Source: Ascidiella aspersa (Eukaryota). From it: a stretch of 64,000 nucleotides of DNA. Of the stretch, positions 4,931 to 62,375 are shown piece by piece (position 1 is the first letter of the stretch; each line of letters starts with the position of its first letter). Location: NCBI GenBank assembly GCA_963924565.1, contig OZ004612.1, positions 3,348,001 through 3,412,000 on the forward strand, read 5' to 3'. The notes beneath the pieces are model-generated. The model saw only the letters and a list, made by a program, of their open reading frames with translations. It had not been told where the DNA came from and ran no database searches. The translations under genes and the position numbers were made by a program.

Positions 4931-5147
4931 GGCTTGCTGATTCGAGGCTTGACGATAAGCGAAACCGTGTTCGGGGAACTTCGCACAACTTCGGAAAGCA
5001 TCTCAACGCTGGTGACCCGGAGTCCGTTGGCGGCCACGATCTGGTCCCGGGGCCCGATGACCCCCAGGCGCATGGCCGGCCCCCCTTCAAGGACCCGGTT
5101 CACCACCACTCGGCCGTCGTTTAGGGGAATCACCGTGATGCCGATGC
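4931..5147 (-). CDS. Coding exon 3: PDZ domain
   Basis: Acceptor cttttcacag|GC completes the phase-1 Gly codon. GIGITV..GRVVVNRVLEGGPAMRLGVIGPRDQIVAANG..VSLIVKP is a PDZ signature. Ends at CC|GTAAGT (phase-2 donor) or reads through to CCG TAA. Confidence 0.87.
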
Positions 5148-5637
5148 CTGTGAAAAGGGCGATTTTTGCTGGTGACTGGATTAAACGTATAGATTCTTTT
5201 TCTTGCAACTCATAGTAGGCCTACACCTAAATCGAATGTACCTAATACCTGTGTACAACCAATAAACGATAGAACCAGGACTGACAAAAATAAACCTAAA
5301 TTTTCGAGATCTATTATGGATAACTGACACGTACTTAATATCTTGGTAAATGGTCGCATTTGTTTAATTCCAAGTACAGTAATCAGGTGTCACTGTCACT
5401 GTATAAAGACAAATTATTGTTGAAATATTGCCAAGCTTTAGCACAACAGTGCTTCATGATGAAGTGCGAGAATTTAATACTTTTTGGGGGTTTGTATACA
5501 GGTTTTTATTTTGACCTTGTTAAACGCTCCTAGAAGTTTCTAAACTGTTTTCGGACGTTTCATTATATTTCACGTGCAAAAGCAGCTATCAGTTAAAACG
5601 AACGCTTCCAGGGGTGGGGTTCGAACCCAGTACCTAC

Positions 5638-5830
5638 CGACTCCTGTGTCGTTTGGCAGCACGACTGTCCGACAACCACGAATAGGGCTCTTCACTTGGG
5701 TCGGTTCCTGGACGTAGTTGTTATGCGGCGAACTCTCACTAGTTGGGGATCCCCTCAGTCTTTGCATGGCTGACTCTGCTACTTGAATGCTGTTGTTGAG
5801 TTGCTTGTAGCGCATGATGTCTTGGCGGTT
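5638..5830 (-). CDS. Coding exon 2 of PHLDA-like PH + PDZ protein (end of PH helix, linker, start of PDZ)
   Basis: Acceptor tttctttacag|AAC (phase 0) and donor G|GTAGGT (phase 1). Splicing to exon 1 gives HYK|NRQDI, matching the PHLDA motif QYKNRQAI. Confidence 0.85.
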
Positions 5831-7310
5831 CTGTAAAGAAACAATATGTGTTTAATATGCTGGATTATATTATATACATGGTTCTTAAATGTGCTATGGG
5901 CTTACTACAGGGTGCTTAAATGTGCTATGGGCCACCCTTAAATCGCACTGACCAATGGTTTGTTTGGTATAGGTCGTTGATAATTGTGGTTTGTGTGTAT
6001 TGGTTGCCAAAGGTCTACGGAAATATACTTTAAATCCTTAGCGACCCTTGTGTATAATGCAATAATTATATATACTACTGTTGGCCCACGCGGCTGTAAT
6101 TAGATCCATGGCGTTTAAAAATGCTCTCATTACACACAACGGTTATTTTAACCGCACTCGGACCGCAAGCAACCAATCATTTTGACACTCGGCAACACAG
6201 CAAGCAAATATCCCTCCGACCCCTCAGTATATTGAAGCCTAACCTTAGCGCAACGAGCAACAATAGAACTAGGCACTCCGCCCGACTAATGAAACGGAAA
6301 ACGAATTTCCGCCGCTCAATATCGCGTTACAAGGCACCACGTTACAGTGAAACACCAGGAACTTCGTAGAATATATGATCCCAAAAGACTGGATACGATA
6401 CGTCGTGCATATTGGCGTTTCGCCATGCTATGTCCTCTATTTTGGGAAGATGTTCACAAAATTTCCCTGTATTTTGATGCTCTTATAGTTGTGTGCTGTT
6501 AAATTTGTTTATGGCTTTGGTATGTAAAATGTGTTGTCCTGTCAGATGTATTAGTTTTGAGTAACTCCGAATAAGATAAGAAATTGAATTAGGCCCACAC
6601 AAGCCATTCACAACTTAGATTAGAGTTAGCCACATTTTGCTCTAATTCTTTGAATTAGAAAACTTGAACCATATAGTTGTCAAAACTTAAAACAACTCAA
6701 AAAAAGCGCCACTAGGAGCAGTTATAGCATAACTGGCAACTTTTTCCAATGTGTGCGGTCAACGTGGCGACACGAGCTTAATCTTAGCACTACGCAAGAA
6801 CAGCACACAGCAAAAGAGAACGAAAAAAACACGTAGCCTGCCAACCTAAAGCCTTAAATTGCCGCCTGTGAGCTTCTGGGCAAGGCGGTGCTTTAGTTTG
6901 ACACAAGCTCGGGTTCGAAGAGACAGTTGGCAGACCAGCGTTGCACTTATCTAATGAAGGGCTCACTCCCCTTTACTTTGGCCGATAAAGCGCGTAGATT
7001 ACGATCGCCAAGATTACCAGGCAAAGGTCCGAGAGGCGTTTTTGTCTCTGGGAGAAAATGCCGCCACTTTCAACCTTACGGTTCTTGAGGGGCGGGCACT
7101 TCATGTTAACCTTCAGGCACGACGTGCTTTAATGTGGAAAACATAGCCCGGAAACAAAAACGCTGCAAAGGCGCATGAGAAGATGTTTGGGCCAGAAAAA
7201 CAAAACATGGCTTCGTTTGAAAAAGTTGGTTAACGATTACAATGAACACTGTAGATTGTTTAATGGCGAAAATAACGGCCCAAATAGACGTTAAAAGCGA
7301 CATGCTTTAT

Positions 7311-7352
7311 TTTCAAACGTTTCGGCAATTTCTAATGCCATCATCAGTGATA
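7311..7352 (-). ncRNA. Minimal type I hammerhead ribozyme (mirror copy)
   Basis: Reverse complement reads TATCA CTGATGA T GGCA TTAGAAAT TGCC GAAA CGTT TGAAA. The core is intact and stem I has one mismatch. Confidence 0.65.
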
Positions 7353-7503
7353 TAAAGGCCACATCGGTTGCACCCGTTTATATACACTTTGGTCGCACCA
7401 AGAAATGATAAAAATGACGCTTGTTTCGCACTTTTTTATCATTCTTATCATTCCTTGGTGCGACCAAAGTGTTCTTAAACGGGTGTAACTGATGTGGCCT
7501 TCA

Positions 7504-7545
7504 TTTCACTGATGATGGCATTAGAAATTGCCGAAACGTTTGAAA
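7504..7545 (+). ncRNA. Minimal type I hammerhead ribozyme
   Basis: Stem I TTTCA/TGAAA, core CTGATGA (7509-7515) plus an extra T, stem II GGCA/TGCC, GAAA (7533-7536), palindromic ACGT stem III. Predicted GUU cleavage after 7540. Confidence 0.75.
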
Positions 7546-8163
7546 ATAAAGCATGTCGCTTTTAACGTCTATTTGGGCCGTTATTTTCACCATTAAACTT
7601 ATGAACAGATCCGTATATAGTGTTCCACTGTAGATTGTAATTTCCAAAAGTTGTAATTAAGAAAGTGTCCCACAGTAACCGGTGTTTTGAAGTCCGCTCA
7701 TGTTGGTTACCATCGAGCGTTTTGCGAGTAAATCCTGAAAACTAAATGTGGTAAAGCCATAAAAAGTAAGGTTAAAAGGATAAGAAAAATAGCTCCGAAG
7801 AAACCTTTTAACCCATATTTTAAGTCCCTCGCTTTACTAAATTGTGTTTTTCACTCCGTGACTCTGGCATTAAAATATTGAGATATTTCAGACCGTTTTA
7901 TGGACCGTTAAAAACCACTTGGTCCCCCCGCATTACACTAAAAGAGAGCCGTTAACCACGTAAAATGTCTTTTGATGACGTCTTACCCGGATTACAAGCC
8001 TCAGTTTTTAATCGCACGACGAGAAAATCGATCCTTTCCGTCTTAAACCGCGTTCCTACGTTTAAATTAGCGGCTTGGGGTTGATGTTCGGCTTACAAGG
8101 CAAAGCTGTTTGGATCTAACTGCGACTAAACTACAAACTCACAAACCAAAAAACCAACGCCAT

Positions 8164-8367
8164 TATCAAAGCCCATAAAGTTGGTAGCATTTTTAACGTT
8201 TCGAATATCTCTTTGTCCATTTGCAGCATCTTTTTAAACAACATTGTTAATCTAGATGTTAAAAATGAATAAAGTGATATTTGAAACGTTCACAAAATGC
8301 CACATACTTCTGTATGGACTTTGATATTCATCATACGTATCGCTACAACCTTCAACCATTATGCTCC
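8164..8367. mobile_element. Palindromic MITE family A, near-complete copy
   Basis: Self-complementary arms TATCAAAGCCCATA..AACGTTTCGAATA / ..TGAAACGTTCA..TATGGACTTTGATAT, ending CCATTATGCTCC. Confidence 0.8.
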
Positions 8368-10033
8368 TAACGCGATCTTGGTTTTGCGAAGTTTCGTTTG
8401 ACCTTTTAAGTTCGGGAGTTCACAGTGAGTGCAAAACAATACGACAATATGGAGCCAAAATCAATATATATTCGAATTGAAAGTAGAACAAAAATAGCAA
8501 AAATACGACGGAAATGCGCCAAAAACGTGCCTAACGACTGTTATTTTAGTTTTACGGGATCTCGAGATATCCATTGTCGATTTTATCAAGAATGACAGTG
8601 TTTTAGTATAATTTTCTGATTTTTTAGCTGTATGGAAGACTACTTGCTTGTTTGCAAGATTAAATAGCAAAAAGCCGTGTAAATATTACCTTTTGAAATA
8701 ACAATCAACCGCTAGCGTTTGTTGCATCTATTTTTTGTTTAAACTTTTGAGTTGCACAAAGTTATCAAAAAATAATTTTGTTTATTTGGATTTCCTCTTG
8801 AGTTCCATTAAATACAACCACAATCACATCTAACACATCAAAAACCGATTTGTTTAGTTGTCGATCCCAGCAAATTCGGAAAGAAAACAACCATAATTGT
8901 CTCGGGTGCTTTGCTTCTAAACTTACACCCGCATCATTTCAAACAAGCCCAGATAAAATCACCTATTCGCTCTAGGCCTCAGTGCAAACCATCCTTGCTT
9001 TTTTGTTTAACCTTATTCTCCGAGCACGTTCTTTACGCAGCGACGCTTATTTTCACACCGAGTGGCGTGGCAGGCGTGCGTCATTCTAACAGCCCGAAGC
9101 GAAATTTGAACCGAAGACTCCAGGTAAATGACCTGTCGGAGGTTATTCGCGCCCTTCCGCCGTTTTCATGGCCAAGGTTATTTCCGCGCACGTATTTTAA
9201 CGCAAAAAACGCTAATTAGAACCGACTTTTTGAAAATAAAACTCTTTAATTGACCCTAATTTATGCGCAAAAGGTGTTTTTACTTAATTTTATCTGAAAA
9301 ACGATAAATTAATCTAAATTATAACCCCCGATAATTCTTCACAGTGTTATGGCATGTAATCTAAGTCAAGATTGTTATAGGATGTAAAGACAAATATATT
9401 TTCCCTAAGTTTTTCGCTAATCGAATGAAAAACAGATGACAGACTTGTCTGACTAATATATCTGGTTTTATTTAAAGTCATTGTCGTCATCTATTATTGA
9501 AATACGAGGCCATATGTTTTATAAACATTTAGTTTTCAACTTTAACGTTTCTCTGCACACGTATCTTCACGCGAAATACGCCACAGTTTCTGAAAATTGC
9601 ACTATTTGTGCAAAACCAGGTCTTGTGATGCAGGCATATGTGCCGTGTGCTAAACATTGGAAAAAGAACGGCCGCGAAATCACACCTTTTTGTTATTGAG
9701 ATCATCTAAATTGTTGTAGCGTGCAAAAACGAAATGGGATATTGTTGTTTCGGGTGTATTGCGTTTTAAACCAGGTGTACCGGAGACGGTTTGTTTGTCA
9801 GAATAAAAATAGCGATAAGGCGAAGTGTAACATATTAACAAGACTTTGAAAAGCACTCATAACACCACGCGTATCGCGTATGTTGCATTTAAAAATGTTT
9901 TAATGGAGTAAAGAACTTTTTTCCAGAATTTTTTCCACCCATATGCTTTCCTATTATGCGTTACACTATAATTTGATTATGGTATTGGAAGTGTGAACTT
10001 TAACCGCTTATTTAACGCAAATACGGTTTAAAA

Positions 10034-10111
10034 TGTTGAAAATGAATAAAGAGTTATTCGAAACGTTCAAAATGATACCTACTCTGTATGGGCTTTGATA
10101 TTCTTATTACG
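10034..10111. mobile_element. MITE family A fragment (one arm)
   Basis: GAATAAAGAGTTATTCGAAACGTTCAAAATGATACCTAC..TATGGGCTTTGATATTCTT. Confidence 0.8.
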
Positions 10112-10440
10112 GTTTTGAATAGTTACTCTTTTTCCCTAATATATCAAGTCCTCTTTTAGTTTAGGTCAAAGCATTATGGTCTATAAGAAAGGCGGATATG
10201 CAACAACAGAAATTTGCAAGTTGCAAATTCCTGCACACCCCTAGTTTTAGATTGCACAACACTCCTAACCCTGTACTAACTGGCGTTTAATGTGGCCAAC
10301 AACGCGCAGATGAAAGAAGTGTTGATGGCTACTCTAACGAACTCCCAAAGTCGTTGTATTTACAGGCATCTTGACATTGGAGCAAGTCGTGCAATGGTCA
10401 CGCCTGTATTTGCCGATGGCAAATCGCTTTCCGTGCAACA

Positions 10441-10754
10441 ATCTCACGCACGATGTGATAAGGTTAGCCACGTAGGCCACATGCATGTGCATTTATGCAA
10501 ACATGTTCTTTTGTGGTTTGTCAAAGTTTAAAAATAACCGTTACAAAAATAGAATGAAACTCTAGCTAAAACGCTTCGATTGCATGTGCATTTTGCAAAG
10601 TTAACCTAACAAGTGTTTTAACAGTATCTCACGCACGATGTTACACAAGGTCAACCGCATTGCTTAGATGCATGTGCATTTCTGCAAACTTGTTTTTTTT
10701 TTGTAGAAGTTTGAAAACCATGCTTCGTAAATAGGATGAAACTTAAGCTAAACG
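10441..10754 (+). repeat. Diverged tandem duplication (~185-bp period)
   Basis: ATCTCACGCACGATGT..ATGCATGTGCATTT..ATGAAACT..AGCTAAA at 10441 and 10626. Confidence 0.75.
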
Positions 10755-13204
10755 TGACCAATGCCCTATCGCAGGGGTGGATGCCATCACCATTATTTAT
10801 GACCAAACTAAACATATCGTGATCTTTGGCCTTTCGCACGAGAGAGAACAGTTTGGGCGCTTTTCGGCTTGCCAAAAAAGCATCAATAAAAAAGGAATAT
10901 TATTTCTGCTGGCAAAGCAATCAGAAAAATGCGTCTATTTAAAATCGACTATTATAACAACAGGCGTTAGGTTGTGCGGGAATGCATACGTTTGTAGCTT
11001 TTGTCACGGCCATAATTTTTAAACGCGCAAAGGTTTGTTGCTTTTTCGTTGAAATTGCGACAAAATGTTTCCCCCGCTGCATTTGCCGCTGTTTTGTGTT
11101 GCTTTTCGTGTGGAAACGTAATTTCGAAAAGCAATCAATCACCTTGCTTGACAGGTTAAGAATTTTTGACAACGCTTCGATAGCAGAAGCACCAACTGTG
11201 TCGTGGTTGTTATGTATGTTTCCAGTGGCCTTTTTCAGTGTGGTAGGCACCCGGAAAATTTGTGGCAATTTTGTTTTTTAAACTGAAGCACTAATCTTAA
11301 CGAGTCACATATATTGGCTTTACAATAATTCGTGAGAAATAAAATTAATTTTATTTCAGTTTGCAAAAAAATACAACCATATATGTATAATATGTGAGGT
11401 TCCAAAACCATTTCTCATGAGCGTAAGTTGATAAAATAAGGATAATTGTTTATATTGGGATGAAAGCCTGTTCAAACATTGTTATTCAACCATGTCGTAA
11501 TATCCAAACAAAACCACAAAGGGTATAAAAAGTTCTGATATACAACTTTATTCAAAAAGAGCAGAATACTATAGTAGCGCAAATAGCATCATCAGTTATG
11601 CTTCAAAATCTGGGAGTTCAACCTTCACTGAGGAAATTTCTATTTGCCTTCAACGGTGCATATCATTAGCGCCCCTTAAGTACACACAACGGGTCATTTG
11701 CGCATAAGGTTACAAAACTACCGTGAACTTTCCCGGGGATTTGCCATTCCTGGGGGCAAGTAGGTGTTTGACTTGGCAATGATTTATATTGGCCACTTGG
11801 AAATAACCTGTCTCAGCTTGAATCACGTTTGCCAATATGTGTTACAAATTGCGCTTGAATTAAACTACGGTTATTCAAAGCTTAATGCGTTAACCTGGGG
11901 TCAAATATGCGTCCTGAAACCCAAAACACACATGTCTTAAAAGTGTTAACTTTTGCAAATAGTGTTACATATAAAAAATGTATATTGCATATGAATTGAA
12001 CATGGCGTTGCCTTGGGCACAGTATGTTTGTAACCTTGCTATGTTTTATTCCATTTCGTGATGTTATTTTGGGAGCTAACTTTGCCCAAAAAATTCTACA
12101 AGTTGATGTTTTTTATCTGTGTTGGTTGTTAATCGTATTTGTCTTATTCAAAAACTGAAAACAATTGTTGACGAGCTTGCGAACAACCGTGCCTACACAA
12201 TTGGCGAAAAGTGCCCCGCGCTTTCAGTTTTCATCCGGCTTGCTTGGTTGCACCAACGTGCCTTTTTTCAGGCAAGATTTTGTTTAATCTCTCTAATGTT
12301 CACCGAAGATTCTCATCACTTTTCATGGAAACTCGTGATGATTGCAATCGTCCAACAGTAAACAACAGACCACTTAGCTAACCCAAACAAACGCTAGGCC
12401 CACTTCCTCCCCCAAAAAAGTTCATCCGCAAAATGAAATCAGCATTCTCTGAAACAGATCAACGTTGAACCATTTCCAGAAGGGAAAAGATAAGGGCAGC
12501 ATATAACACAAACAAAAAAAAAATTTCATCATTAATGCAGTAGATGAGGATAGGGATTGTAATGTCAATGAAAAAACACTTTATTTATTGTCCAAATCAT
12601 TAAGCCTGTACGACTTCCAAAAGGTTAAATACAGAATATACATTGTGTATATGAACGTTTAGGTTACAGTGCTTGGTTGGATTTTATCCCCCGGTTGGAA
12701 ATCACGAAAAAATATCCTTTAAAATTTTAGCCGGAATTTGAAATCGGCATTCGCTCCAACAAAAAGCTAGAAAGAAAAAGCCCCTGATTACAAATCGATT
12801 AGGTGAAGCAGCAAAAACATGAAACGGGAATCACAGGACAAGGCAATTACGAGCAATGCCGCGAAAAATAGCGTATCTCTACCAAGGGGGGTTTATCCCT
12901 ATCTCTCTGAACAAAATCGCGGGCGTTGTCCTTCTCCGCAGTCCCCTATCGTCTTTCGGGATCGCGCAAACGGCGATAGCGAGCTCAGAAGGGTCGCTGA
13001 GAAGTCACGTTCTGCATTCCCGAGAGCGTTTAAGCGTGGGGAGAAATAGGCGGTGGCTTAAGCAGCGAGAAACCCAACACAGAGTGGGCATTGTGCCCTG
13101 GCCAATTGGCCTGCTTGTGCTTATGCCTGTGCTGCTGCTTTTCTAAGGTTGTATCCTCTATTTCTCGTACCTCGCGGTTACGGCCCTTTTTTGCCTGACG
13201 TAAT

Positions 13205-13750
13205 TGACTGGTGTGTATTGTATTGTATTGTGGGCTATGCACGTGTCGTGTGGTAAGTGTAAGTATTTTTTGTGGGTGGTTGTTTTGATTTTGGGTGTTT
13301 CTGTGCGTGGGTTCGCTTGATTGTGTGTATTGTGATTTGTGACTTTTTGTGCGAACTTGTACGTGTTGTGTGTTTGTTAGAATTTTGGTGGGTGATTTTT
13401 TTGTGCAAAAAAATATTATGTGTTTCTGTTTCGATGTGATTCCGTGTGTTCATGAGTGTGTGTGTGTGTTGCTGTGTTGTATGTGTTCCTGTGTTTGTTT
13501 CTGTGTATTTGTGTGTGTGTGCTTCCATGTGTTTCTGTGTTGCTGTATGATTTCTGTGTGTCTCTGGACTTGCATGTACATTTTGGTACGCAGGTTAGTG
13601 CTGGTGTTTTTTGTATTTTTAGTGCTTGTGATTTTCTTTACCTGTATTCATTGCACCTATATAGGTTTGTGCATATCGGTATGTGTGAGTGTTTGTGTCT
13701 GTGCTCAACTCTATATCCAACAAGCACATTGCACGCACAACCTCGTGTGT
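13205..13750 (+). repeat. TG-rich low-complexity tract
   Basis: Degenerate (TG/TTG/TGTG)n with strong strand asymmetry. Confidence 0.85.
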
Positions 13751-14023
13751 GGATGAAGTCCACATCGGATTAGCGACCACAGCTTGTTATCTCCCGTTCG
13801 GAATTTAGCAATTAAAATTTCTCGCAGCGATTTCGGCGAAAAAATAAACAGCCGGCGTCATTCTCGGTCCGAAGTTCGCAAAGTAACCGCAAGAAAGTTT
13901 ACATATGAGCGAAATCGGGTGGAATTTTGCACGTAGACACACCTTTTTGGCCGATTTAAGAAAAGAACGAGCTATCAACGCCAATACGCTATGTATGCTT
14001 TATTTTTCAAAAGCACTTTTTCG

Positions 14024-14149
14024 GACGTATAGCAAGTATATCAAAGCCCATACAGTAGTGGTTAACATTTTTAACGTTTTTAAATTATCAAAATGAAATG
14101 ACTAAAGGCTTTGATATTCTTACTACGTCTTATTACAACCCTAACCATT
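14024..14149. mobile_element. MITE family A, internally deleted copy
   Basis: TATCAAAGCCCATACAG ... GGCTTTGATATTCTTACTACGTCTTATTACAACC. Confidence 0.75.
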
Positions 14150-15719
14150 TTTTTGCGCAACGCATTTCTAATTTCATTGCCACCCCAGCTTCGTAGCTAA
14201 ACAATGTTAAAAGTCGGACAATGCAAAAAATGTGCTTGAAAAATTGTTGTGGATTAACATTTCAAGTTTTACAGATATCAGAAATACTACTTAAGCAGTG
14301 TACAAACGTAACGATTTTGGTGCAAATAAGGTCATCAACATTGCCTTTGAACCATTTTCCTGTAACGTTTAAAGCGTTTTAGCACAGCCTTGTCTACATA
14401 CTTAACCGGATACTTTAATGTCAACAGTAGAATGCCAGTCGCTTATGACGTAACAGTCGAGATGACGCGCGGTAATTGACGCTGGCGGCGCACCCAACAA
14501 TTGAACTTGAGCTCGACTGTCTGTGCGGTGGCACAACTTGACGCTTCGCCTCCTTCTGTTTACGTCACAGAGCTAACGAGACGTTTTTCGTCAGCAAATT
14601 GTCGCTTGGCTTCGGCATTTTGACAAATTTGGTGTCGATTTCAAACGGATTTCGGTTTAATATCCGACACCTTGACACTTGAATTATTGTGTTAGGTTGA
14701 GTAATAAAGCCCTTAAAGTGGAAGGAACACAGTTCAGGAAAAAGGAGATGAAAAATCGGGTTGAAGTTGACGTTGAAACATGTTTAACATATAGTTGGCA
14801 CATTTTAAAGGAAGTTTTAAGAAGGTTTTTTCCTACTTTCATTGTTTTGTTTTTCAACACGTGTAGCATACTTTTTAAAGTGTATAAAAGTTAAAGTGTA
14901 TAAAAGTTTGTGTGGTCAACAAAAATTGTAAACTAAAATCGTTGTTTGTTTTTTAAACTGAAGTCTTACAACTATTGGAGACAACCACAAAGGCGCACAA
15001 CTGTTTTTATTAACATTTTTTCCCCTTGGACAAGCCATCTCCACAAGTCGAGCCAAAGGGCAGAGAAATATAGCGAAAAAGTGGTTCTTCGAACTGCGCT
15101 TTGTAAATTGACCCAGTCGGTCATGTTTTCAGGATTTAAAGTGGCACGGTCAACACTCGGGATGCTGCAACCCCTAATTTCAACACAGTTAAACCCCGCT
15201 GGCGTAAAACCCTAAATCCACAGGTCCTTGAAATTACATCCAAAACGGAACTTTGAGGAATAAAACCAGTCGGTCGCTTCAAAACCTGGCTAAACCAACC
15301 AGAACAACGAATAATAATGGGGCTATGACGTTGCATTTGAAGGCTTGTGTTAAGAAAGGTGTGATAATGCAAATATTACTAACCGCAGCTCGAAAAGTTT
15401 ATTACCGAGAGTTACCGTCTAATAAAAACTGAGATTTTAAGCTTTTATTAACAAATAAAAATGTAGAGTAGCAAACTTAAAGATACTTGCAAATAAAAAG
15501 TTCCAAATTAGGCATTTTCGAGAGATTTATTTTGCAAAGTTTGAAGAATTTCGGTTTAAAAAAAACTACCTCTTTGACAACAACAATTATTTCCCCCACC
15601 GAAAATGCCCAACTTTTTACCCGTATCCAACTCGTTAATTCCTAAAAGGTTACAAAATGAATTTTGGGTGAAAAAGGAACACTTTTTTGGAGAAATTGCT
15701 GGACTATTGTACCATCACC

Positions 15720-15950: not shown

Positions 15951-16278
15951 GTAACAAAAAGGTCTTGTGAGATTTGCAAAGGGTTGAAAAGGTATTTTTC
16001 TTTAGCCGCTGTATTATCTGACTCTAGCTATAACCACTATACTTTAATATTTGGTTAATTTGTTAAAAGTGGGCTAGAACAATTGCGATTCGTACGATTC
16101 TAAGTTACGTTCGATTGTTTTTGTTTCTGAGATACCATATGTTGCTAGGAATTTGGCAAAGCATCAACTGAGTGACTTTTTATATGTTTTGCGCAAGGCA
16201 TCGGTAATTGGTTAATTAAAGGAAGAGGAAAATTCGACGTGGTAGCGAATGTATAATACAATGTTATATGCGTTTTGT

Positions 16279-16379
16279 GGAGCATAATGTTTGGAGGTTG
16301 TAGTAAGACGTAGAAAGAATATCAAAGCCCATACAGAAAAAACATTCTAAATGCTACCTACTTCTGTATGGGCTTGATA
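16279..16379. mobile_element. MITE family A, internally deleted copy
   Basis: GGAGCATAATG..GTAGTAAGACGTAG..TATCAAAGCCCATACAGAA ... CTTCTGTATGGGCTTGATA. Confidence 0.8.
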
Positions 16380-17098
16380 GGCGTTGACTTTAAATGAAGA
16401 GGACACTTCAACTTTCACGGCCATGTTAACTTCCGTTAACTGTGACTTGCTTTAACCTAACCATCACGTCTAACAACTTTAACCTTAAAAGACAGTCCGT
16501 GACCTTACTCCAACATCAGCTTTGATCAGCCTTAAAAACGCCCAACATGTTCAGCGTGCAACTTAATTAACAAGGCAATCGCGCTGACACGAATTCTGTG
16601 ATCGACCGGGCAATAAGTGAAATGTCAAAATCTCGCGACTTTTCAGTTAATTGGATCGCGCCCAAAAGCCCCACCATAAAAAAGGGCCACGACCACCGGT
16701 AAATGATCAAACAGCGATCAGAGAAATCATTCGCAAAAACGACTGTGGTTCACCTTATTTGGCGTTGCAACACTATTAGGGCGTCATGCAAATAAACCTT
16801 TGGCTTTTTTAATTAATTATAACTGGTATCGCTCGTTTCGTTTAGTTCCGTTGTGTGTTACATGTCATTACCACGTTGAAAATGACATCAGCATTTCTGT
16901 TATGTAAAAAAAACTTTAGGAATTTTTCTTTTTGAGCAAACATATAATTCCGATTATGTTGAATATTTTGAAATAACTATGGTGGCATCCAACATTATAA
17001 TAAAAGGGGGACATCTTTATGGAAATCAAAAGCATTGACAGCAGGTTGCTGTTTGTCTTTTATTGTTGCTGTAAAACCTAAATTTGAGTAAAACTTTT

Positions 17099-17253
17099 GG
17101 AGCATAATGGTTGGAGATTGTAGTAAGACGCAGCAAGAATATCAAAGCCCATATAGAAGTAGGTATCATATGGTATTATATGAATAAAGAGTTATATATT
17201 AGAAACGTTCAAAATGATACCTACTTCTGTATCGGATTTTATATGCTTACTAC
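17099..17253. mobile_element. MITE family A copy
   Basis: GGAGCATAATGGTTGGAG terminus plus the inverted right arm. Confidence 0.8.
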
Positions 17254-17594
17254 AGGATGAAATGTTTTTTTTATTATTCATCTACTTTTACTGATTTATA
17301 TCCAGTTGGAATAAAAACCGAAGGTCTATTAACGAGTCAAACTCTTTTAAGTGATTTACAATCTACAAGCTGGACACGTGGCACCACTGTGTAAAGCCAC
17401 TCTACAAGCAACTTTATTTGTGCAGATTGCAGGTTACACGCGCACAACATAGTATAACATGGTACAACATGGTGGGTTCACCGCAGGTCTGCCACCATAG
17501 TGGAAAGGGAAATGTCTAATTAATTAGGCCGACGCTCCCTAAGTTATAACTCACTTAAGCCTCTAAAAGTTGCAGGACTATAGGAAATGTCACT

Positions 17595-17744
17595 GTTGTA
17601 TAAGAATATCAAAGCCCATACGTAGTAGTAGGCAGCATGTGGTATCAAATAAATAAAGAGTTATTCGAAACGTTCAAAATGCTACCTACTTTTGTATGGG
17701 CTTTGATATTCTTATACCTCTTGGTATAACCACCAACCATTATG
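17595..17744. mobile_element. MITE family A copy
   Basis: AAGAATATCAAAGCCCATAC / GTATGGGCTTTGATATTCTT inverted pair. Confidence 0.8.
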
Positions 17745-20700
17745 TACATCGAACAAAATATTCGACACCAGACAGAAACCTTCTTGACCCTGTGTGACAT
17801 CGGGACCAGCTAAAACAAATTAAAAACCTGCTCAATCTGGCCGACCGCCGAGCATTCGCGGAAAAAACGCGCCAACCAGTCGTTCAATACGAGGTCGCGC
17901 AAAAGTCATGGTCTGTCGTTGGACGCTAATCGGGAATAAATCGTTTAGCACGGGATGTGAAATGAGCTGGTCGTGCAACCTTCTGTCTGCTGATTTCTGC
18001 GGCTGTTTTTACGACACGAACGCTGCTGCGTTGTCGAGACAACTGCAAAATGTTGTTGCACTGGTGTGAAAAAATTGGCTATTTTTGATGGTAATTTTGG
18101 ATATTGGCTATTTTCGATGGTAATTTTTGCTAATAATGGCGATATATGCATACGATTTAAGCATGTTGCCGTTGTTGCGTTTGTCTATATTAGGAGTTCA
18201 TGAAAGGGCATAAATGTAGTTGTTCCTAATCTAAATAAATTCAATTTCGTGCGAAAATCTTGCGATAGGAAAGTAAGACGAAATCTTGCGATGGAAAAAG
18301 TAAGAGAAATATAACTTTTTCCGAAGCCTATTATTAGTTCTTTTATTTTTTTTTAAATGTGATACCAAATAATTAATTGAATTTTTTGTATCTAAAGTTG
18401 TGGTTGGTATGATAGATGGCAGTTCCAAATCTAAAAAAGAAAATTTGAGACGGGAAATAAAAAAATGAAGTTTTACCTAAGCCTTCTTTTTTACAAACAA
18501 GAAAAATGTTTTATAAGGCTCGGTTTCGGGAGCCAATTTCCTTTGCAACAAAAGGTCATCCATCCATTACAAAACTAGTCCTCAGTAAACGTCGGTTCCG
18601 GGCGCAATTTGGGTAAAAGTTCGCGGAAAAAACCGGCGAGTAGGACGCCATTCTTCCTAATTTGTTCGCCCTTTCTTCCTTTTTGAAAGCGGATACAAAC
18701 AGCCTTGCGCTGTTAAAGCTTTCAGTCTCCATTTTGAGTTGTTTTCTTTTTGGAAAATTTTGATTGTTCAGCACAAAAACAGTCACAAGATATTTAAAAT
18801 CAGATTTTAGGTTATTAACCAAAAATTTTGAAAATATTGCAAAAAAACGTTGTTTTGTTAAAGACTTTACAATAAACCGACCTTCTAGTCACTTTTTGTG
18901 CCGTTTTATTATTTTTCTATATAGTCCAGTTTGCTAAAAAAACACTTAAAACACATTGGAAAGAGCTTTATGTTAGTTGTCATTTTCTTCATGGAATTTT
19001 GCAAACCGTTAATGCTTAAAATACAGATAAAGCTTTTTTTGGTGTAAAGTTTGGAGCAATAGCATAAGTCAATTAGTATGACAAATTTAGAAGCAATATG
19101 CTTTTATTTTAAGCTTTGTTAACAACCTGAAATAATTTATCATTTGATAAACCAGGGCTTGTTTTAGAAATATTTTAATAAGCTAGTACTTACGGAAGTT
19201 ACACACAATGCTTTATATATGATTTAGTTTTGTCACCTACACCAAGAAAAATGCCTGTTTAGTGTTTCAAACTCGGTCACAAGTACTCAATTAAAATGAA
19301 AACACGCCCATCCTTATTATGAAATACAAAACCTGGCGGTTTTTTCATGAGAACCATAATAAACCGGTCATATCAAAACTTGCCTGAGAGAGTTTTTGAC
19401 TGTTGTTTTAAGCGCGAGCGCCTGGCCTTTGTGACGACAATAAAGGGCCGAGGCATTCTAGCATAGCGCGCGGTATGTCCCTTTCTCCCGACCCACGTTC
19501 AACACAGCTCGCTATGCGGCTTGAAACGCCTGTCAGCTTGCGGTTTTTCTCAGCAGTTTGCGGCCTTATCGTTCGATGCCTCGTGTTTTCAATGCATTTG
19601 GCTTGCAGCGCTCAGGCCTCAACTTGCTGACTGCCTTAATGTCAAGCCGAGCCGGCGACAAACAAAATGGCCGTTGGTTTAGTGGATGGGATGCTGCTGG
19701 GGTAAACTTGGTGAAGATGGCGTGATAAGGAAACTGTAGCGTTTTGTTTTATCGAATGGAGCTTTTCTCTTGGAGTTTTTGAGTTATATAAAAGTTAAGG
19801 AATTTATTATGATTGGCGACATCTGTAATAAGTTGGCACGTGGCACTTAAAACCCGTAAATCCAGTGGAAAAAAACGCACCATCTTTATTCTTTGATATC
19901 GTACATTCATCAATGTTTGTTTATAAACGCGCAATTTGTTGTCGGAAAAAATATATGGTTGTGTTTTAACTTTCTGAAAGTTCTTACTAAAAATTCTACC
20001 AGCAGTTCAGTGCAGGAAAATTTTCAAGCTAACATACTTTGAATTCGCCCCAAAAATGTTCTAGAGTGTACAGCAAAATAACATCATCTCGCAAAGAATA
20101 ACTTTTCGGCCCTTTAAGCCAACTTTCCGTTTCACATTTAGAAGGCTAACGTTCGGTTTTAAATTTTCGAAATCCAAACAAGCTTTGGTGTCGCGTTCCA
20201 TAATTGACGTCATCTATTTGTTATTGATTCAGTGGTAACCGCACAAGAAAGAAATTCAGCCAGTCGACTTACGTCATTATGTTTGTATTGTGCGAAATAT
20301 TAACGAGTTGCCAGCAGCGAGAAGTTTTTTGCCCTATACGAGCTATTTTGCTGGTCATAGTTGGCGTTTAAACGGCGAATAACATGTTTTCACCGTAATC
20401 TATTTGTAAAGCGTATACCGAAGCAATTTTAACGGTTAAAGTGAAATTTTTAAGCCAAAATATTAACGTTTTGGGACTTGTTTTAGGAAAATTAACTGGG
20501 AAGTTTTAAAACTATTAGAAAACCTTGCGAAAAAAAGGTTTTTATATTTTTAATATATACGGGTCTGCACAGTAACGCATTAGAATTAATCCAAATGGGG
20601 CTTAACCCAAAGATTAAAGAAATGCAAATTAAAATTAAGGTAAAACAATCTCCGATAGATCTGATATTACTTAAAGTGTGAAAACTTTAAATTCGCTTTT

Positions 20701-20965
20701 TGTTTCTATAATCTATACAATCGACAATAATAGTAGAAATTCTCTTCGATAGTTACACTGTGCAGTGTGCACGGATCTGTAATGTAGCCCAATAATGAAT
20801 GTTAGAGATAAAAGGCCGAGTATCGACACCATCTTGATTAAGACGTCTCAATACGAACTTGTTTCATTTTCAGTTAATGTGATTACATGTCAAAAACGTC
20901 CTTATCAAGGTGATATCAATTTGCTTGACCTTTTTAGCTTTACAATTCATTATTAAATCCTCTTT

Positions 20966-21053
20966 GTAGTAAGAATATCAAAGCCCATACAGAACCAGGT
21001 ATCAGTTTGCCATTCTTACTACGTCTCACTTCAACCTCCAGCCATTATGCTCC
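20966..21053. mobile_element. MITE family A, short copy
   Basis: GTAGTAAGAATATCAAAGCCCATACAG ... ATTCTTACTACGTCT..CCATTATGCTCC. Confidence 0.8.
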
Positions 21054-24000
21054 GAAATCCTCTTCGTGATATTCGTTTTTGTTCCATATACAACCGTTTT
21101 ATAAACCTTAACAAATAACTCGAAACTGCTAAGAACCCAAAACGAATATTCCCAACCTAAATCCACCCCGTACGCATTTCCTTGTATTTCGCGATTAACC
21201 ACTTGCCACGGATCCACAGGAGCAGGCATTAAGGTAACGTCGGGTCGTCGACCGCGATTTGGGCCAAGGGCGCCGTTCGAACCCGAATGCCGCGCGAGCT
21301 TCAATTAAGAAAAGCGCCGATTTACGCGACTTTCCAGCCGCTAAAGCTGCCGTAAGCTGCTTGCCGCAGAGAAACGCGACGAACTTATGCCGGACAATTA
21401 CATCGGCAGTTTCTCCGCACTGCAAACAAAGCACAGGCCAGACGCTGTTTTGGCGTAAACAGCCCTGAAGGATTTAAGCCTATATAGGTAGCCGGCGTTT
21501 TTTTGCGACCTATTGGCCGGGGACAGGTTTTAATATTCCTGCTGTTTTCGGTCACCTTAATATTGTAAAAGAACTTTTTTTACTGTGGTGCTTTTTGTGG
21601 CCTGATTATACACACACTATACCGCCGGGTAACGGAATTTATTGTTTATGGCTTTTCGTGACCTGGGTTAGAGCTAAAGAAGAGTTTTTTTGTTTAACGG
21701 TTATATTCATGACTAGGATATGCGATGAAACGCGCAGTGCACAACAGATCAATGTTACCGAGGAAATTCGCTTTCCTGTCACCCGCAAAAAGCCTTCGAA
21801 ATCTCGCAGACGTGACTTGCTACCTGTGCGCTTGATAAAACCACATGCCAACATGCTTACGTGCAACCAAGAAAGCACCATGAGCCACGCCCTTGTGTTA
21901 TGTGTAAAGCCACGCCTATTTAGTCCTTATGCATCCCCTTGACCAGTTGAAAAGTTCTTGCTTACCTTAACTGTTTCATATTATCTTTAAAGCACTTTTG
22001 AAACGTTCTGTGTATAATTGACAAGCAGGGTGTTAAGGGAGCCTGCTGTCTAAATCTTGTGTGTGTCCTTAATTTAACCAACAATTTTTTACCGCCTATG
22101 CACAAAACGCATTTGGCTTGCGACATTGTAATGTTAAGGGAGATGTTCTTGGATTAAAAAAAATAACACTTCACTTTTAGTGATCACAAACAGGCAAATA
22201 TTTTCGAAGCAAACAACCTTTGAAGCGAAGAGCAACATTACTAGCATCTGCCCTTCAATGGCTACAATTTTAATCGCGACATTCCAGGGAGTCAAAACGA
22301 ATCAATATTTTGCGACGTGGGGCGATATGCATTTCAACGCTGTTCACCTGCCATTTGGTCGTGCAGAATTTCACTGTTACACCGAGCGTTTATATTTCTA
22401 TGAAACAGTGCAAAATGGAATGCCAAGCTTGCTAGAAACGTGACACTTTGATCGATATCGCTGTTTTTCGATTTTTTTTTTATCTAATTTACGCTTTTTA
22501 AAAATAGTTTTAAAGATTTACCCTAAAACCGCTCATTATTTACTACCAGACCATAAAAACAGTACATTAACGTGACAAACAAAACTAATGAAATCATCAT
22601 CTTCAAAAACTTAAAACTGTCAACATAAAACTTAAATTTTCTTAATACTTAAAGCGTATTCTTAGGAGTACTTCAATAGCTATGTCCTGAATTAGTTTGT
22701 TAAGGCAAAATTGAGAGCTTTTAGCAGTGTTGTAGTGAATTAGGTCAACGCTTGATTTGATTGCACTTAAAATCATCGTTTTGGTAAAATGATAATCTGA
22801 CTGGGACTTGAGATATTTCACAAATGACTTGCATGGGCCTTAGGCAATTTTTAAATGACTTGTTTACCACATCGGATAAAACTAAACGCAATATTTTATT
22901 TATTATAAAAATCAATTTCATTTTACTCTGCCATAATCAGGGATTGAAAAAAGGTCGTTATTCTCTCCAAAAACATACCTTTGGGACCCCTAGCCTTACA
23001 AAAAAATCTAGTTTCACGCTGGAATGTCGATATTTTCCTCTGGCAAACACAGGCCAAGGTGTACCACGGGCAACGTGCCTTAATTACGTAGGACAGTCGT
23101 AAAACGAAATGTCACCGAGACCCGTCGAACGACGGCCCACGCATTTTTAATAAAATAAAGGTGGGGCACGCAAAGCCGGCATATTTGCCAGCGTTTTATA
23201 CGCCTTGACTGTCGATTGGTCTTTTATGGGCCTTCTGTTCACACTTGAGCGTTGGCTGTAGCCGGTTTTACACGAAGGGTGTATTTGGCATTACCATAGA
23301 TTTACGACATTTGTTGGTCAAAACGGCGTTTGAGGATTGAATGCTGATGTTTAGTTGAATAGATTAAAAAAAGTATAAGACCTTTGTTTTATTATACATA
23401 GGAATAAGGTTTTGGGGGATTCTTATACTATGGACAGTAAGATTTTAAAAAGCACTGTGTATTTTACGGTTGCGTTAGAATCCAATTCTTTTATCTTTTT
23501 TGGTAGCCATATTTGTCGAATTCTAAATCGGGAAATCAGGTCTTAATGACTTTTGAAACAAACTGTCGTCAAGAGACCCACCTTATTTCCCAATTTCCCC
23601 AAACGTTTTGAAACATTTTACTATAGTATATCTTTAGTGTCATAACTTAAATATTATATATTTAGTGTAATAACTTAACACTATACAAGGTAAATCCCAA
23701 ATTAATCGCTTCAAAACGAAAATAATTGAATGTAATACAACATTACGGATTGTAATCTTTAAAATGGCCTCTTTTACATCACTTTTGGTAAATCGCTTGA
23801 AAGTCGCCATAGACTGTCAACTTACAGTCACGACCGATATGAATTCTGACGCATTAAGACCTAGCTATATATGACTATGTCACGATGGCGCGTCACAAAT
23901 CAAAGTGACGAAGGTAGTTTTGGTTTCGCGTCGTGCTTATGAATGGGCTTGTGAGTGACTGTGACAGTCTACAACTACTACTCATGCTGTGGTTTAGATT

Positions 24001-26407
24001 CGAGACGTGTGACTTTCACATCTATACATGTAACTTCCTTTACGCAATGCACGCTGGCAATGTCACGGCTTTTCATATGGGCCAGTTAAAAAGTGGCCGG
24101 CCCAGATTTGGTGCTTATGGTACATTGTGGCTGATTAAATTAAAGGCACATCATGCGGCTCGCTTAAAAGTTTATTTGTTGCCCTGTTTTGGTAAAATAG
24201 TCAAGGTGGCCAGTCCTTTTTAAAAATGGCCGTATGTAAAGACTATACCTTTCATTAAGGAATTTTAATACATGTTTCAGTGCAAATTTCCGCTTTTTAT
24301 CCGGTTTAAATGAAAGGCTGGTTTGTAATTCCTAATTTACCCGTTTTTTGTTACTTGCATTAAATGGAAAATAGGGAGCTAGGCTTCTCTAAAGAATGAC
24401 CATAAGCAATGACTAATTTTACTAAAAAAAATTAAACACAGTTTTATGAATAGTTTTACTTCTCAAATGATTTCTTTTATAGAACTGCTATACCAAGGCC
24501 CCGTCTATAAACATTCGCAATGACCTTATAAGGCACGTCCTGTACCGATTCGTTCCCTGTTTTGCGGTTTCGGTCGGAGCAGGAAAATGTTGTTTTTTCG
24601 ATAATAATTAACAATCAAATTTATTAGGCGACCACTTCTGTTTTTTTTTCATTTTTGAAAATTGCTAGTAATTTATGCGGCTGTCTTATTTGTGTTTTGT
24701 TTCCTTTAAGCTTACAAAAAGTTCATTGAAGAGAATTGAGTTGCCAAAGCTTTGTTGTTCTACTTACGCCAGTATTAGCCGCAAAAAACGTTTAAGTTTT
24801 GCTATGTATAGCCTAAGTTACGTTTAATAATGCATTTACTTAAATGCATGCATGACGGCCTTCTTTCACCGGTTTACCATACTCACTATTTGCGCATACG
24901 ACAATACTCTTCTCATTACGCAAGACCGGTGCGTTTCCGTTGGCGCAGTTAAGGAAGCATCAACATAAACAAACCAACCAACCGCCGTATATAGTGTACA
25001 GCACACGCGCTAACATAAAAGGACAACGGGGCATTTAGAAGAAACTCAATTGCTTAGGCCTTAATACTACTGCTAAGCAAAAAACAAGGGGACGGTGTTA
25101 AGTTTTAGTAACTTCTGCGCAAATCTCTCGTATTCTAAGCGCCATAGTTTTAAACCATAACCAATTATTACCGAAAGTTTAACAATTCTTAAAAAACACA
25201 AAAATGACAGATTTTCCACAGTTCTTTAAAAAGTCTAACAAATGGAAGTTAATTATTTTTTGGCAATTAATTTATAAAACAGCTTCTCACAATCTGTCGA
25301 AATGAATGCTTAAAGTGCCAAATACCCTCTTTTGGTCGGAAATGTGCAAACGTTGATAACCACAGGGGTAAGCGAATATATCGGTTTTACTTTTAGGTGT
25401 AACAAATTTCGTAAACCCATCGCTTTCAACCGTAAAGACGGCACAGCCAAACGTTTTTTCGTAACCAACTGAAGTTTAAACCGTTTAAATATCCACAGTT
25501 TAAACCAAATTTTGTATAGTTGTGTAATACAGTGCTGTTTAGAAGCAAGAATTGTTGGTGCTTTATTCAGTAGGTAAATTTGACCGACTATTAGGACATT
25601 CAACCACTATCAATATAAACGCCTGTGAAAACACAATTATTCAGCGTTAAGTTTCGCACCGCGGTTTCAAAGGAAGTTTCCAATGGTGTGACATGCAGTG
25701 GTGTATGGTAGCAGCATAGCTGATGTTTTATTGTGTTGTAGCTTTACGGAAGGCACAGTGGCTCCCCATTTATCATAGCAACACCGCACATTGTTTTTGC
25801 CACACAGAGCGCGTGATTAATGTAGGGAAGGCAGATTGCTATAGGGGTGTGTGAGTGGCGTGTTTTCGCCTGTTTTATGATGCACAGAACCATACAATTC
25901 TCCCTCGCATTAACTGCCGAGCTCAACAACGTTTGAATAATCGCAAAATCAAACGTGTTATCTAACCAGTTATAACATTACCGTGCAACAATTTTAAAAG
26001 AGATGTTACACCACCATAGCGGAATCAAAGTTTTGTTAAACTTATAATTACCTAAAAAAAAATTAAAATTAGCTCATAAAATAAATCCTGCAGAACTCCT
26101 AATACACGTAAGAAATCCCGATAATCCCCAAAACAGCGTAAAATATACTTTTACACTTAACCCCACAACATCTCTATGTGCGTAAGCAAAGCTGCATTTA
26201 GACTTCAAGGAAAATCATGATGTTCACCCTGACAAAATTAAAGCGAGCCAATATAACACACAGAAGGTCATTTTTACCCTTCCTTTTTTCACCTTCAAAA
26301 TTTTTTTCTACATAAAAAAAATCGGGGAACTCAAGAACTTATGTCCCTGTCAAGTCCACGCGCGCGGCTAAATAAACAGACAAAAACCAGCAACCAGTGT
26401 GACTCAC

Positions 26408-26932
26408 CTTATAATGGATGAGCTGGATCTGAATCTGGGCCACCCAACCGGTTCCTTCCCTGCACCTGAACGTCATCGTTTCTCCTTGCTCCGTCTCAAG
26501 GCTGAAGTACTGCAGTCCACCGCTCTCATCTTCTTGCAAACGAGCCACTGCTCGAATATGGCAAAGAGGAATCGTGCGTAGAGCAGAACCACCGCTCGTC
26601 TTCTTACTCTTGGTGCGATAAAGTCTAAGTCCATCGCTGCTTAGAACCCCGTACTTTCGCTTCCACGCTGGCCCAATAGGCAGCCGTCTATAGTCAACCT
26701 TCTTGTCCAGCACTCCATCGCAAATCTCCGTTACTTCTTCAGCGCCCATAATGCTCGTGTTCTCAGGCCAGCTATAGTTGCTGACCACGCTCTGCCGGTG
26801 CGAGTTTACACAGCAAGGCAGGATGCTGACCTGGTGGCTTTGTTGCTGCTGCTGCTGATGTCTTGTTGTGCCCACGGAGCCCGATATACCGCTGGCTCGG
26901 ATGCCCGCACTCACTTGAAGCTCGTTCACCAT
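26408..26932 (-). CDS. Coding exon 1 of PHLDA-like PH + PDZ protein (polyQ tract + PH domain)
   Basis: ATG at 26932 with an in-frame upstream stop. Translation GVLDKK..WKRKYGVLSSDGLRLY..YFSLETEQGETMTFRC..GWVAQIQIQLIHYK resembles the PHLDA-family PH domain. Phase-0 donor AAG|GTGAGT at 26408/26407. Acceptor ttttttag at 27116 gives a 5'UTR portion 26933-27115. Confidence 0.88.
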
Positions 26933-62328: not shown

Positions 62329-62375
62329 TAGGTTCACAGAGCAATAAAACAAGTACAAGCTTATGATTCACACAC

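What the first reader, a model, noticed from the sequence alone, without database searches (positions are those of the whole stretch)
4931..26932. PHLDA/TDAG51-type PH domain fused to a PDZ domain across a 20.6-kb intron
Seen: phase-compatible exons 26408-26932, 5638-5830 and 4931-5147 join into polyQ-PH-linker-PDZ (about 324 aa if the 211-250 exon is real). The junction rebuilds FRC..GW.AQI.IQLIHYK|NRQDI. Known: this parallels the PHLDA1 C-terminal PH motif FRCPQDQGWNAEITLQMVQYKNRQAI. Vertebrate PHLDA1/2/3 are compact PH-only phosphoinositide binders that dampen Akt and have no PDZ. Inference: an invertebrate PHLDA relative that couples PIP binding to PDZ scaffolding, representing either the ancestral architecture or a lineage-specific fusion.
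Basis: partly seen in the sequence, partly recalled or inferred. Interest (0 to 1): 0.8.

Follow-up and report, generated by a model that had tools for sequence, protein, structure and literature searches.

The report
Tunicate PHLDA-like gene with PDZ domain
This is a real, conserved sea-squirt-type gene whose lipid-binding PH domain is the counterpart of the vertebrate PHLDA tumour-suppressor family but which also carries a PDZ protein-docking domain that the vertebrate proteins lack.

Summary
The three exons exist as described on the minus strand: 26932-26408 (PH), 5830-5638 (linker) and 5147-4931 (PDZ). They have GT..AG borders and a 20,577-base first intron. The real two 3' exons lie 2.6 and 3.3 kb beyond the window's left edge and close the frame at 305 codons (366 from the upstream ATG).

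The gene is the orthologue of uncharacterised 297-305-aa PH+PDZ proteins of Ciona intestinalis, C. savignyi and Clavelina.

The PH domain is PHLDA-type:
- Apart from this family and two chance repeat matches, phmmer over 1.84 billion proteins found only vertebrate PHLDA proteins.
- Two PHLDA proteins searched back each hit only this exon in the genome.
- Profile-profile probability is 99.3%.
- The nearest predicted structures are PHLDA1-3.

Exon 2 encodes both the PHLDA-like helix extension and the first PDZ strand, which ties the two domains into one gene.

RNA reads in this species were too few to show junctions. In a relative, cDNA-like and genomic contigs 97% identical up to the junction show the splice.

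Whether PH-PDZ is ancestral or a tunicate addition stays open. Phosphoinositide binding plus PDZ docking is inferred, not tested. I found no paper describing this.

The parts
26408..26932 (-). Exon 1. It carries the 5' coding part from the first ATG (26932); an alternative, better-context start is the ATG at 26749-26747 (MGAE..). It holds an N-terminal extension with a short Gln run and a di-Cys motif, then the PH domain, and ends ..IHYK before a GTGAGT donor.
   Evidence: tblastn to Ciona P0007 residues 1-111 gives 1.8e-44, starting at 26749.
26459..26725 (-). PH domain core (Pfam PF00169 match, residues 70-158 of the exon-1 translation). It is PHLDA-type.
   Evidence: 5.1e-06, 27.4 bits, cut-off 25.1. 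for the PHLDA kinship.
5831..26407 (-). Intron 1, 20,577 bases, GT..AG, phase 0. The position after ..YK is shared by relatives.
   Evidence: Of the 12 genomic exon-1 fragments of relatives that I read, 11 continue after YK with V, a GTN codon that fits a GT donor. The six longest intron ORFs have no Pfam match. No Rfam family reaches gathering score.
5638..5830 (-). Exon 2 (193 bases). It encodes the continuation of the PH C-terminal helix (NRQDIMRYKQL.., alignable with the PHLDA NRQAIL/NKKAIQ stretch), a variable linker, and the first beta strand of the PDZ (..CRTVVLPN..).
   Evidence: (8.8e-14). AF2 model of the Ciona orthologue: helix 99-138 spans the junction and strand 160-165 belongs to the PDZ.
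5148..5637 (-). Intron 2, 490 bases, GT..AG, phase 1.
4931..5147 (-). Exon 3 (217 bases). It encodes the body of a canonical PDZ domain with a GIGI carboxylate-binding loop. GC is 63% against 48-54% in the other exons.
   Evidence: PDZ_6 3.7e-09; 1.9e-34.
1..4930 (-). The window's part of intron 3 (7,521 bases in all). The true exons 4 and 5 lie outside the window at L005 7409-7303 and 6677-6619.
1744..1886 (.). High-copy interspersed repeat inside intron 3. It is not part of the gene product.
   Evidence: DNA word depth 52,545-225,996 against about 50 elsewhere. RNA reads pile up here on both strands with loose ends on both sides.

Best explanation
A five-exon, minus-strand protein-coding gene, of which three exons lie in the window, in what is probably an ascidian genome. 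It encodes a protein of about 305 aa, or 366 aa if the upstream ATG is used.

Domain order:
- An optional N-terminal extension with a conserved di-Cys motif.
- A complete PH domain.
- A long helix, about 40 residues in the Ciona orthologue's model, that continues the PH C-terminal helix across the exon 1/2 junction.
- A short disordered linker.
- A canonical PDZ domain.
- A tail of about 55 residues, disordered in that model, ending in a conserved SPRHF(K/R)F(F/T).

It is the single detectable counterpart in this genome of the vertebrate PHLDA1/2/3 family, and the orthologue of uncharacterised PH+PDZ proteins of Ciona and Clavelina.

Shown: gene structure, domain content, conservation and PHLDA kinship.

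Inferred: the PH domain binds membrane phosphoinositides as PHLDA proteins do. The beta1 Lys and the beta2 Trp-Lys are among the nearly invariant columns across both families. The PDZ domain binds the C-terminus of a membrane or signalling protein. The protein would then act as a phosphoinositide-dependent membrane adaptor rather than as a bare PIP competitor.
For: Structure:
- Open exons with GT..AG borders, and a frame that closes at 915 or 1098 bases on a stop at the homologous end.
- Pfam PH and PDZ above their cut-offs.

Orthologues:
- Ciona intestinalis (297 aa), C. savignyi (297 aa) and Clavelina (305 aa) all read ..IHYK|NRQDI.. continuously. Precomputed Pfam shows PDZ in all three and PH in two of them.

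Splice in relatives:
- P0018, 305 aa on a 1,154-base contig, is 97% identical (122 of 126) to the genomic fragment P0020 up to ..KYK and then diverges. P0024/P0025 show the same at 82%.

PHLDA kinship:
- phmmer gave 23 hits at E<=0.001: 16 of this family, 5 PHLDA-like and 2 chance repeat proteins.
- Reverse searches hit one place each, exon 1, at 1.6e-9 and 9.1e-8.
- hhalign probability 99.3, E 6.7e-21 over 106 columns. BLASTP 2e-16.
- Atlas structure hits are PHLDA2/3/1, with TM by query 0.78-0.85.
- In the tree the two groups are split by one branch with 100/100 support.

Fold:
- AF2 of the Ciona orthologue has mean pLDDT 81.6, and its PDZ fits PSD-95 PDZ3 at 1.5-1.6 A.
Against: - No junction read in this species. 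The one RNA run was read to about 6% and gave 0.1-0.35x depth on exons 2-3, so no joint could be listed.
- Only three family members carry an organism name.
- Single-sequence E-values to PHLDA are modest (1.4e-06 to 7e-04).
- No NAP-family gene lies on the window's contig C6, so there is no NAP1L synteny support.
- The tree has no outgroup.
- PIP binding, the PDZ ligand and any effect on Akt are untested.
- The AF2 model gives no docking of the tail in the PDZ.
Confidence: 0.85

Rival explanations
1. Two neighbouring genes were wrongly joined: a PH-only PHLDA-like gene (exon 1) and an independent small PDZ gene 20 kb downstream.
For: The intron is very long (20,577 bases). No junction read was obtained here. 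Vertebrate PHLDA proteins are PH-only: none of the 117 non-PH-PDZ rows listed carries a PDZ family.
Against: Exon 2 encodes both the PHLDA-like helix continuation and the first PDZ strand. Exon 1 ends in an open phase-0 donor with no stop at the homologous position. The frame closes over five exons. Three annotated orthologues and six short contigs carry one continuous PH-PDZ reading frame. Spliced/unspliced pairs exist in relatives.
Confidence: 0.03
2. The PH domain belongs to another PH family that is already known with PDZ (syntrophin, CNK, Tiam, ARHGAP21/23), and the PHLDA likeness is convergent.
For: The language-model feature search on the whole Ciona protein ranks PLEKHS1, an arthropod 368-aa PH+PDZ cluster and syntrophins at 0.89-0.92. 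These scores are leads only, and the 0.89 row falls below the tool's 0.9 line.
Against: With the PH part alone those clusters disappear, and the four nearest structures are all PHLDA. phmmer found no syntrophin, CNK or Tiam at E<=0.001 among 1.84 billion proteins. hhalign to PHLDA gives 99.3%. The PH is contiguous rather than split by the PDZ as in syntrophin.
Confidence: 0.04
3. The locus is a silent or decaying copy with intact-looking exons.
For: RNA depth is close to zero in the one run available.
Against: All five exons are open, the splice sites are intact, identity to distant tunicates is 60-74% per exon, and it is the only copy in the genome. Only about 6% of one run from one sample was read.
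Confidence: 0.04

Closest known systems
Vertebrate PHLDA1/PHLDA2/PHLDA3 (TDAG51, IPL/TSSC3, TIH1)
   Same: The PH domain is alike from the first strand to the helix, including ..FRC..W.A.I...L..YKN(R/K)Q.. and the basic beta1/beta2 residues. The two are reciprocal best matches. PHLDA proteins bind PIPs and repress Akt (PMC6215895, abstract and passages read).
   Different: PHLDA proteins are PH-only. None of the 117 rows other than the three tunicate PH-PDZ proteins carries a PDZ family. That their coding sequence is not interrupted after YK is my recollection, not tested here. The tunicate gene adds a long helix, a PDZ and a conserved C-terminal tail.
Ciona intestinalis LOC100178268 (UniProt H2XN87), C. 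savignyi H2Y4S2, Clavelina lepadiformis 'unnamed protein product'
   Same: Same architecture, same exon-junction residues, same conserved tail. Identity to the window's exons is 60-74% for Ciona intestinalis P0007 and 56-79% for Clavelina P0010 on exons 1 and 3, and 45-49% on exon 2 for all three.
   Different: They are annotated only as uncharacterised or 'PDZ domain-containing protein'. They start at MGA.., without the di-Cys extension seen here and in five other relatives.
Alpha-syntrophin PH-PDZ supramodule
   Same: A PH and a PDZ in one short stretch of a membrane-associated adaptor. The title of Yan et al. 2005, seen only in the reference list of PMC6215895, speaks of lipid binding by the PH-PDZ supramodule.
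   Different: There the PDZ is inserted inside a split PH, as the title implies and as I recall. Here the PH is whole and the PDZ follows it after a 40-residue helix. There was no sequence match.

Membership tests
[quoted passage not shown] | The PH domain is more similar to PHLDA PH domains than to any other PH family, reciprocally. | tested here: met
   (5 PHLDA-like PH-only proteins are the only matches outside the family apart from 2 chance repeats; 2 of the 3 clusters looked up that carry names are called PHLDA2). (a single reverse hit each). (99.3%). (the top 4 structures are PHLDA). (one clean split).
[quoted passage not shown] | Small PH-only protein without other globular domains. | tested here: not met
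   A PDZ domain is present. I therefore file it as a PHLDA-type PH domain in a different architecture, not as a typical PHLDA protein.
[quoted passage not shown] | Phosphoinositide binding and Akt repression. | not testable with these tools
   The only indication is that K16, W29 and K30 (Ciona numbering) are at least 90% conserved over 34 sequences of both groups. The contact residues in PMC6215895 are shown in a figure, which is not held.
[quoted passage not shown] | Conserved synteny with NAP1L/CSRP/TNNI paralogons (partly recalled; PHLDA3 beside TNNI1-TNNT2 in PMC9825255). | tested here: not met
   None of the 9 NAP (PF00956) matches lies on contig C6. The window neighbours are an MFS transporter and an adhesion-GPCR-like gene. 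This test is weak, because tunicate gene order is scrambled (my own knowledge).
Canonical PDZ domain | Profile match above the curated cut-off, a G-phi-G-phi carboxylate-binding loop, and the PDZ fold. | tested here: met
   (three PDZ models above cut-off). GIGI is read directly. (the orthologue model fits PSD-95 PDZ3 at rmsd 1.5-1.6 A over 85 columns). The ligand class was not assigned.
Syntrophin-type split PH-PDZ | PDZ inserted within the PH domain. | tested here: not met
   The Pfam PH match covers profile positions 2-88 of 105 within exon 1 alone. The model has seven strands and then the helix, without interruption.

The most novel reading that the evidence does not exclude
PH-PDZ is the original architecture of the PHLDA family in the common ancestor of tunicates and vertebrates. 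Vertebrates lost the PDZ exons, keeping only the start of the helix that exon 2 encodes. On this reading the Akt-dampening PH-only PHLDA proteins are truncated descendants of a phosphoinositide-dependent PDZ scaffold. The tunicate protein may in addition be lipid-anchored through its N-terminal di-Cys or MG motif.
Probability: 0.3. Interest if true: 0.6.

Novelty: new variant of a known kind. Interest (0 to 1): 0.45.

Why it matters
PHLDA1-3 are studied as p53- and imprinting-controlled repressors of Akt, and are treated as minimal PH-only proteins. A single tunicate counterpart that carries a PDZ domain offers two things. First, it gives an experimentally tractable model, Ciona, with no PHLDA paralogue detected in this genome, in which to ask what the family does. 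Second, it gives a concrete hypothesis: the family began, or in tunicates became, a membrane adaptor that links phosphoinositide signals to a PDZ-bound partner. Finding that partner could point to unrecognised interactors of vertebrate PHLDA proteins. The gene models already exist in public databases as uncharacterised proteins, so the gain is one of interpretation, not the discovery of a new gene.

Tried and rejected
- The 211-250 terminal exon is rejected. It has no similarity to the conserved tail, and the real exons were found in L005.
- RNA junction test. One RNA run (X4) and one DNA run (X1) were laid on window:1-6000.
- Tail-in-groove autoinhibition. The AF2 model leaves residues 244-297 disordered, so there is no support.
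- NAP1L synteny: none.
- Arthropod 368-aa PH+PDZ cluster as a distant homologue. It appeared only in the whole-protein feature search (0.90) and vanished with the PH part alone. I could not fetch its sequences, so it is left open.
- Closest kin of the PDZ. The PDB sequence search gives only generic PDZs, the best being PSD-95 at 4.9e-07, so no donor family was identified. The PDB sequence search with the PH gave nothing below E 0.05.
- Nested genes or RNAs in intron 1: none found.
- The bacterial promoter/terminator scan is not meaningful for a eukaryote, and I disregard it.
- Non-tunicate PH-PDZ. The profile search A1 gave 14 hits, and the named ones were only the three tunicates. That tool depends on shared words and a length window, so a blank is weak. 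The profile search A2 listed only the best 120 of 717 hits, so its tail, where invertebrate PH-only relatives might sit, was not seen.
- Literature. 0 papers for LOC100178268, H2XN87 or H2Y4S2. 0 for 'pleckstrin homology-like domain' plus Ciona. Searches listed nothing relevant. Supplements were closed and not asked for. Figure 3A of PMC6215895, which shows the PIP-contact residues, is not held.
Full report
WHAT IS IN THE SEQUENCE

On the minus strand, 26932-26408 translates without a stop to 175 aa. 5830-5638 gives 64 codons plus one base. 5147-4931, read with that spare base, gives a 71-aa PDZ-like stretch; read from 5147 without it, the frame is full of stops.

The borders are ..AAG|GTGAGT, CTTTACAG|AAC..TCG|GTAGGT, TTTCACAG|GC and ..GCC|GTAAGT. 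Intron 1 is 20,577 bases with no N, and intron 2 is 490 bases.

Pfam gives PH on exon 1 (5.1e-06, 27.4 bits, cut-off 25.1). On exon 3 it gives PDZ_6 (3.7e-09), PDZ_2 (7e-07) and PDZ (1.8e-06), all above their cut-offs. Exon 2 has nothing above cut-off.

THE 3' END

The conserved tail of the orthologues finds nothing credible in the window. In the 10 kb to the left (L005) it finds two exons: 7409-7303 and 6677-6622, followed by TGA, each with AG..GT or AG..stop borders.

The five exons add up to 915 bases (305 codons) from the ATG at 26749, or 1098 bases (366 codons) from the ATG at 26932, in frame in both cases. The window is G000:C6:3348001-3412000 of a 308.6-Mb, 75-contig assembly.

RELATIVES

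A word-indexed search with exon 1 gave 12 proteins among 45 candidates. Three are named and full length: Ciona intestinalis LOC100178268/H2XN87 (297 aa), C. savignyi H2Y4S2 (297 aa) and Clavelina lepadiformis (305 aa). Precomputed Pfam shows PDZ families in all three and PH in two. Their sequences run ..IHYKNRQDI.. without a break and end in ..SPRHFKF(F/T). The window's exon 5 ends the same way. I therefore take the genome to be a tunicate's; this is inference from the named best hits.

A profile of seven full-length members found 14 proteins, and no named one lay outside those three species.

Of the 12 exon-1-type genomic fragments whose sequences I read, 11 continue after YK with V, a GTN codon that fits a GT donor. 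P0023 is the exception. The window does the same. The intron position is therefore old.

TRANSCRIPT EVIDENCE

In this species it is inconclusive. The look-up of sequencing runs gave three DNA-like holders and one RNA run of the same species label. Laid on window:1-6000, about 6% of the RNA run was read and 142 reads were laid. Nearly all of them lay on a repeat at 1744-1886. Exons 2-3 got 0.1-0.35x depth, and no joint could be listed. The few exon reads have the first mate on +, which in a usual stranded library fits a minus-strand RNA.

In relatives there is indirect but clear evidence.
- P0018 is 305 aa and lies on a 1,154-base contig. It is 97% identical (122 of 126) to the genomic fragment P0020 up to ..KYK. 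P0018 then runs on into NKQ.. and a PDZ, while P0020 runs into intron-like sequence.
- P0024 and P0025 behave alike at 82%.
- Five more complete or near-complete PH-PDZ frames sit on contigs of 1.2-2.3 kb.

IS THE PH DOMAIN PHLDA-TYPE?

phmmer of exon 1 against 1.84 billion representatives gave 23 proteins at E<=0.001. They break down as follows.
- 16 belong to this family.
- 2 are chance matches to repeat proteins: P0019, a 1,228-aa tandem repeat, and P0030, sushi repeats.
- 5 are vertebrate-type PH-only proteins at 1.4e-06 to 7e-04.

Of those five I looked up four. Two clusters are named PHLDA2 (frogs, rays), one is a Danionella hypothetical protein and one is unnamed. The fifth, P0029, was not looked up.

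Searched back, the Danionella protein and the frog PHLDA2 each hit one place in the whole genome, exon 1 (1.6e-9 and 9.1e-8). So this is the only detectable PHLDA-like gene here.

Further support:
- Profile against profile (15 sequences each) gives probability 99.3, E 6.7e-21 over 106 columns.
- BLASTP to the Danionella protein gives 2e-16 at 32% identity.
- A joint profile found 717 proteins. The 120 listed are this family or PHLDA1/2 of vertebrates or unnamed, and only the three tunicate full-length rows carry PDZ.
- For the PH part of the Ciona protein, the nearest predicted structures in the ESM Atlas are PHLDA2, PHLDA3, PHLDA1 and PHLDA1, with TM by query 0.78-0.85.
- A maximum-likelihood tree of 35 PH regions splits the 23 family rows from the 12 vertebrate rows by one branch with 100/100 support. 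It has no outgroup, so it shows separation, not direction.

THE TWO DOMAINS ARE TIED TOGETHER BY EXON 2

The alignment shows that similarity to PHLDA runs on past the junction into the first dozen residues of exon 2.

The AF2 model of the Ciona orthologue was built on a 34-sequence alignment and has mean pLDDT 81.6 and pTM 0.53. It shows:
- seven strands;
- one helix at 99-138 that spans the junction;
- a short disordered stretch;
- a PDZ at 160-239 whose first strand is encoded at the end of exon 2;
- a disordered tail.

Foldseek finds ordinary PDZs (PSD-95 PDZ3 at 1.5-1.6 A) and PH domains with long helices (GRK2, Btk).

START CODON

The named orthologues begin at MGA.., which corresponds to 26749, where the context is A at -3 and G at +4. 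Upstream, the window and five relatives share a di-Cys motif in an open frame (ILPCCV in three, (F/C)(I/V)CC.G in three). That is six of the eight sequences with an extension. One relative, P0012, has no Met at the MGA position. I lean about 60% towards the longer form being translated in this lineage. The 'polyQ' is six Gln.

HOW IT PROBABLY WORKS (INFERENCE)

PHLDA1-3 bind phosphoinositides through the PH domain, localise to the plasma membrane and repress Akt (PMC6215895, abstract and passages). K16, W29 and K30 of the Ciona numbering, in strands 1 and 2, are at least 90% conserved across both groups.

The PDZ has an intact GIGI loop. No His is apparent where the second helix begins in the orthologue model. 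Placing that class-determining position from the model is my own reading, so the ligand class is open.

The likeliest role is a phosphoinositide-dependent membrane adaptor that holds a PDZ ligand. It may be helped by N-terminal acylation. Nothing here tests that.

ANCESTRY

No relative outside tunicates and vertebrates appeared at E<=0.001, and no named PH-PDZ outside tunicates appeared. An arthropod PH+PDZ cluster surfaced only in a whole-protein feature search and not with the PH part. NAP-family genes are not on this contig. The direction, PDZ lost in vertebrates or gained in tunicates, is undecided.

NOVELTY

The gene models are public but uncharacterised. I found no paper naming them, none that links PHLDA with Ciona, and no evolutionary treatment of PHLDA outside vertebrates. 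The library lacks most subscription journals, so this is not proof of absence.

VERDICT

I rate it a new variant of a known kind, of moderate interest.

Noticed in passing
window 1744-1886: Very high-copy interspersed repeat in intron 3. DNA word depth reaches 225,996 against about 50 around it. It is transcribed on both strands, with loose ends on both sides and many internal variants.
   Followed up: partly
window 7271-7585: Long hairpin element in intron 1. It matches plant miRNA-precursor models on both strands far below their gathering scores (MIR821, 130 bits against 249). No hammerhead family appears at E<=1, and no Rfam family reaches gathering score in 1-28000.
   Followed up: partly
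window 4931-5147: The PDZ exon has 63% GC, against 48-54% for the other four exons and 37-38% for the introns. This is unexplained.
   Followed up: no
window 26750-26932: The N-terminal extension holds a di-Cys motif (ILPCCV) shared with five relatives, which may be a palmitoylation site. One relative lacks the internal Met, so the extension is probably coding in some lineages.
   Followed up: partly
window 55078-56157 (-): A 359-aa open frame with an MFS_1 transporter match (2.8e-15). It is a neighbouring gene, apparently one large exon.
   Followed up: partly
window 61060-61428 and 62361-62939 (-): A GPS motif (GPCR proteolysis site, 2.3e-07) sits in an ORF at 62361-62939, with a hydrophobic ORF downstream of it at 61060-61428. 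Together they look like an adhesion-GPCR-type gene.
   Followed up: partly
window 13235-13773: Low-complexity CA/TG-rich stretch that gives long spurious ORFs on both strands.
   Followed up: no
window 1-6000: The DNA run X1 differs from the assembly at many single sites and small indels, for example a 12-base insertion behind 1364. This suggests a high level of allelic or individual variation.
   Followed up: no
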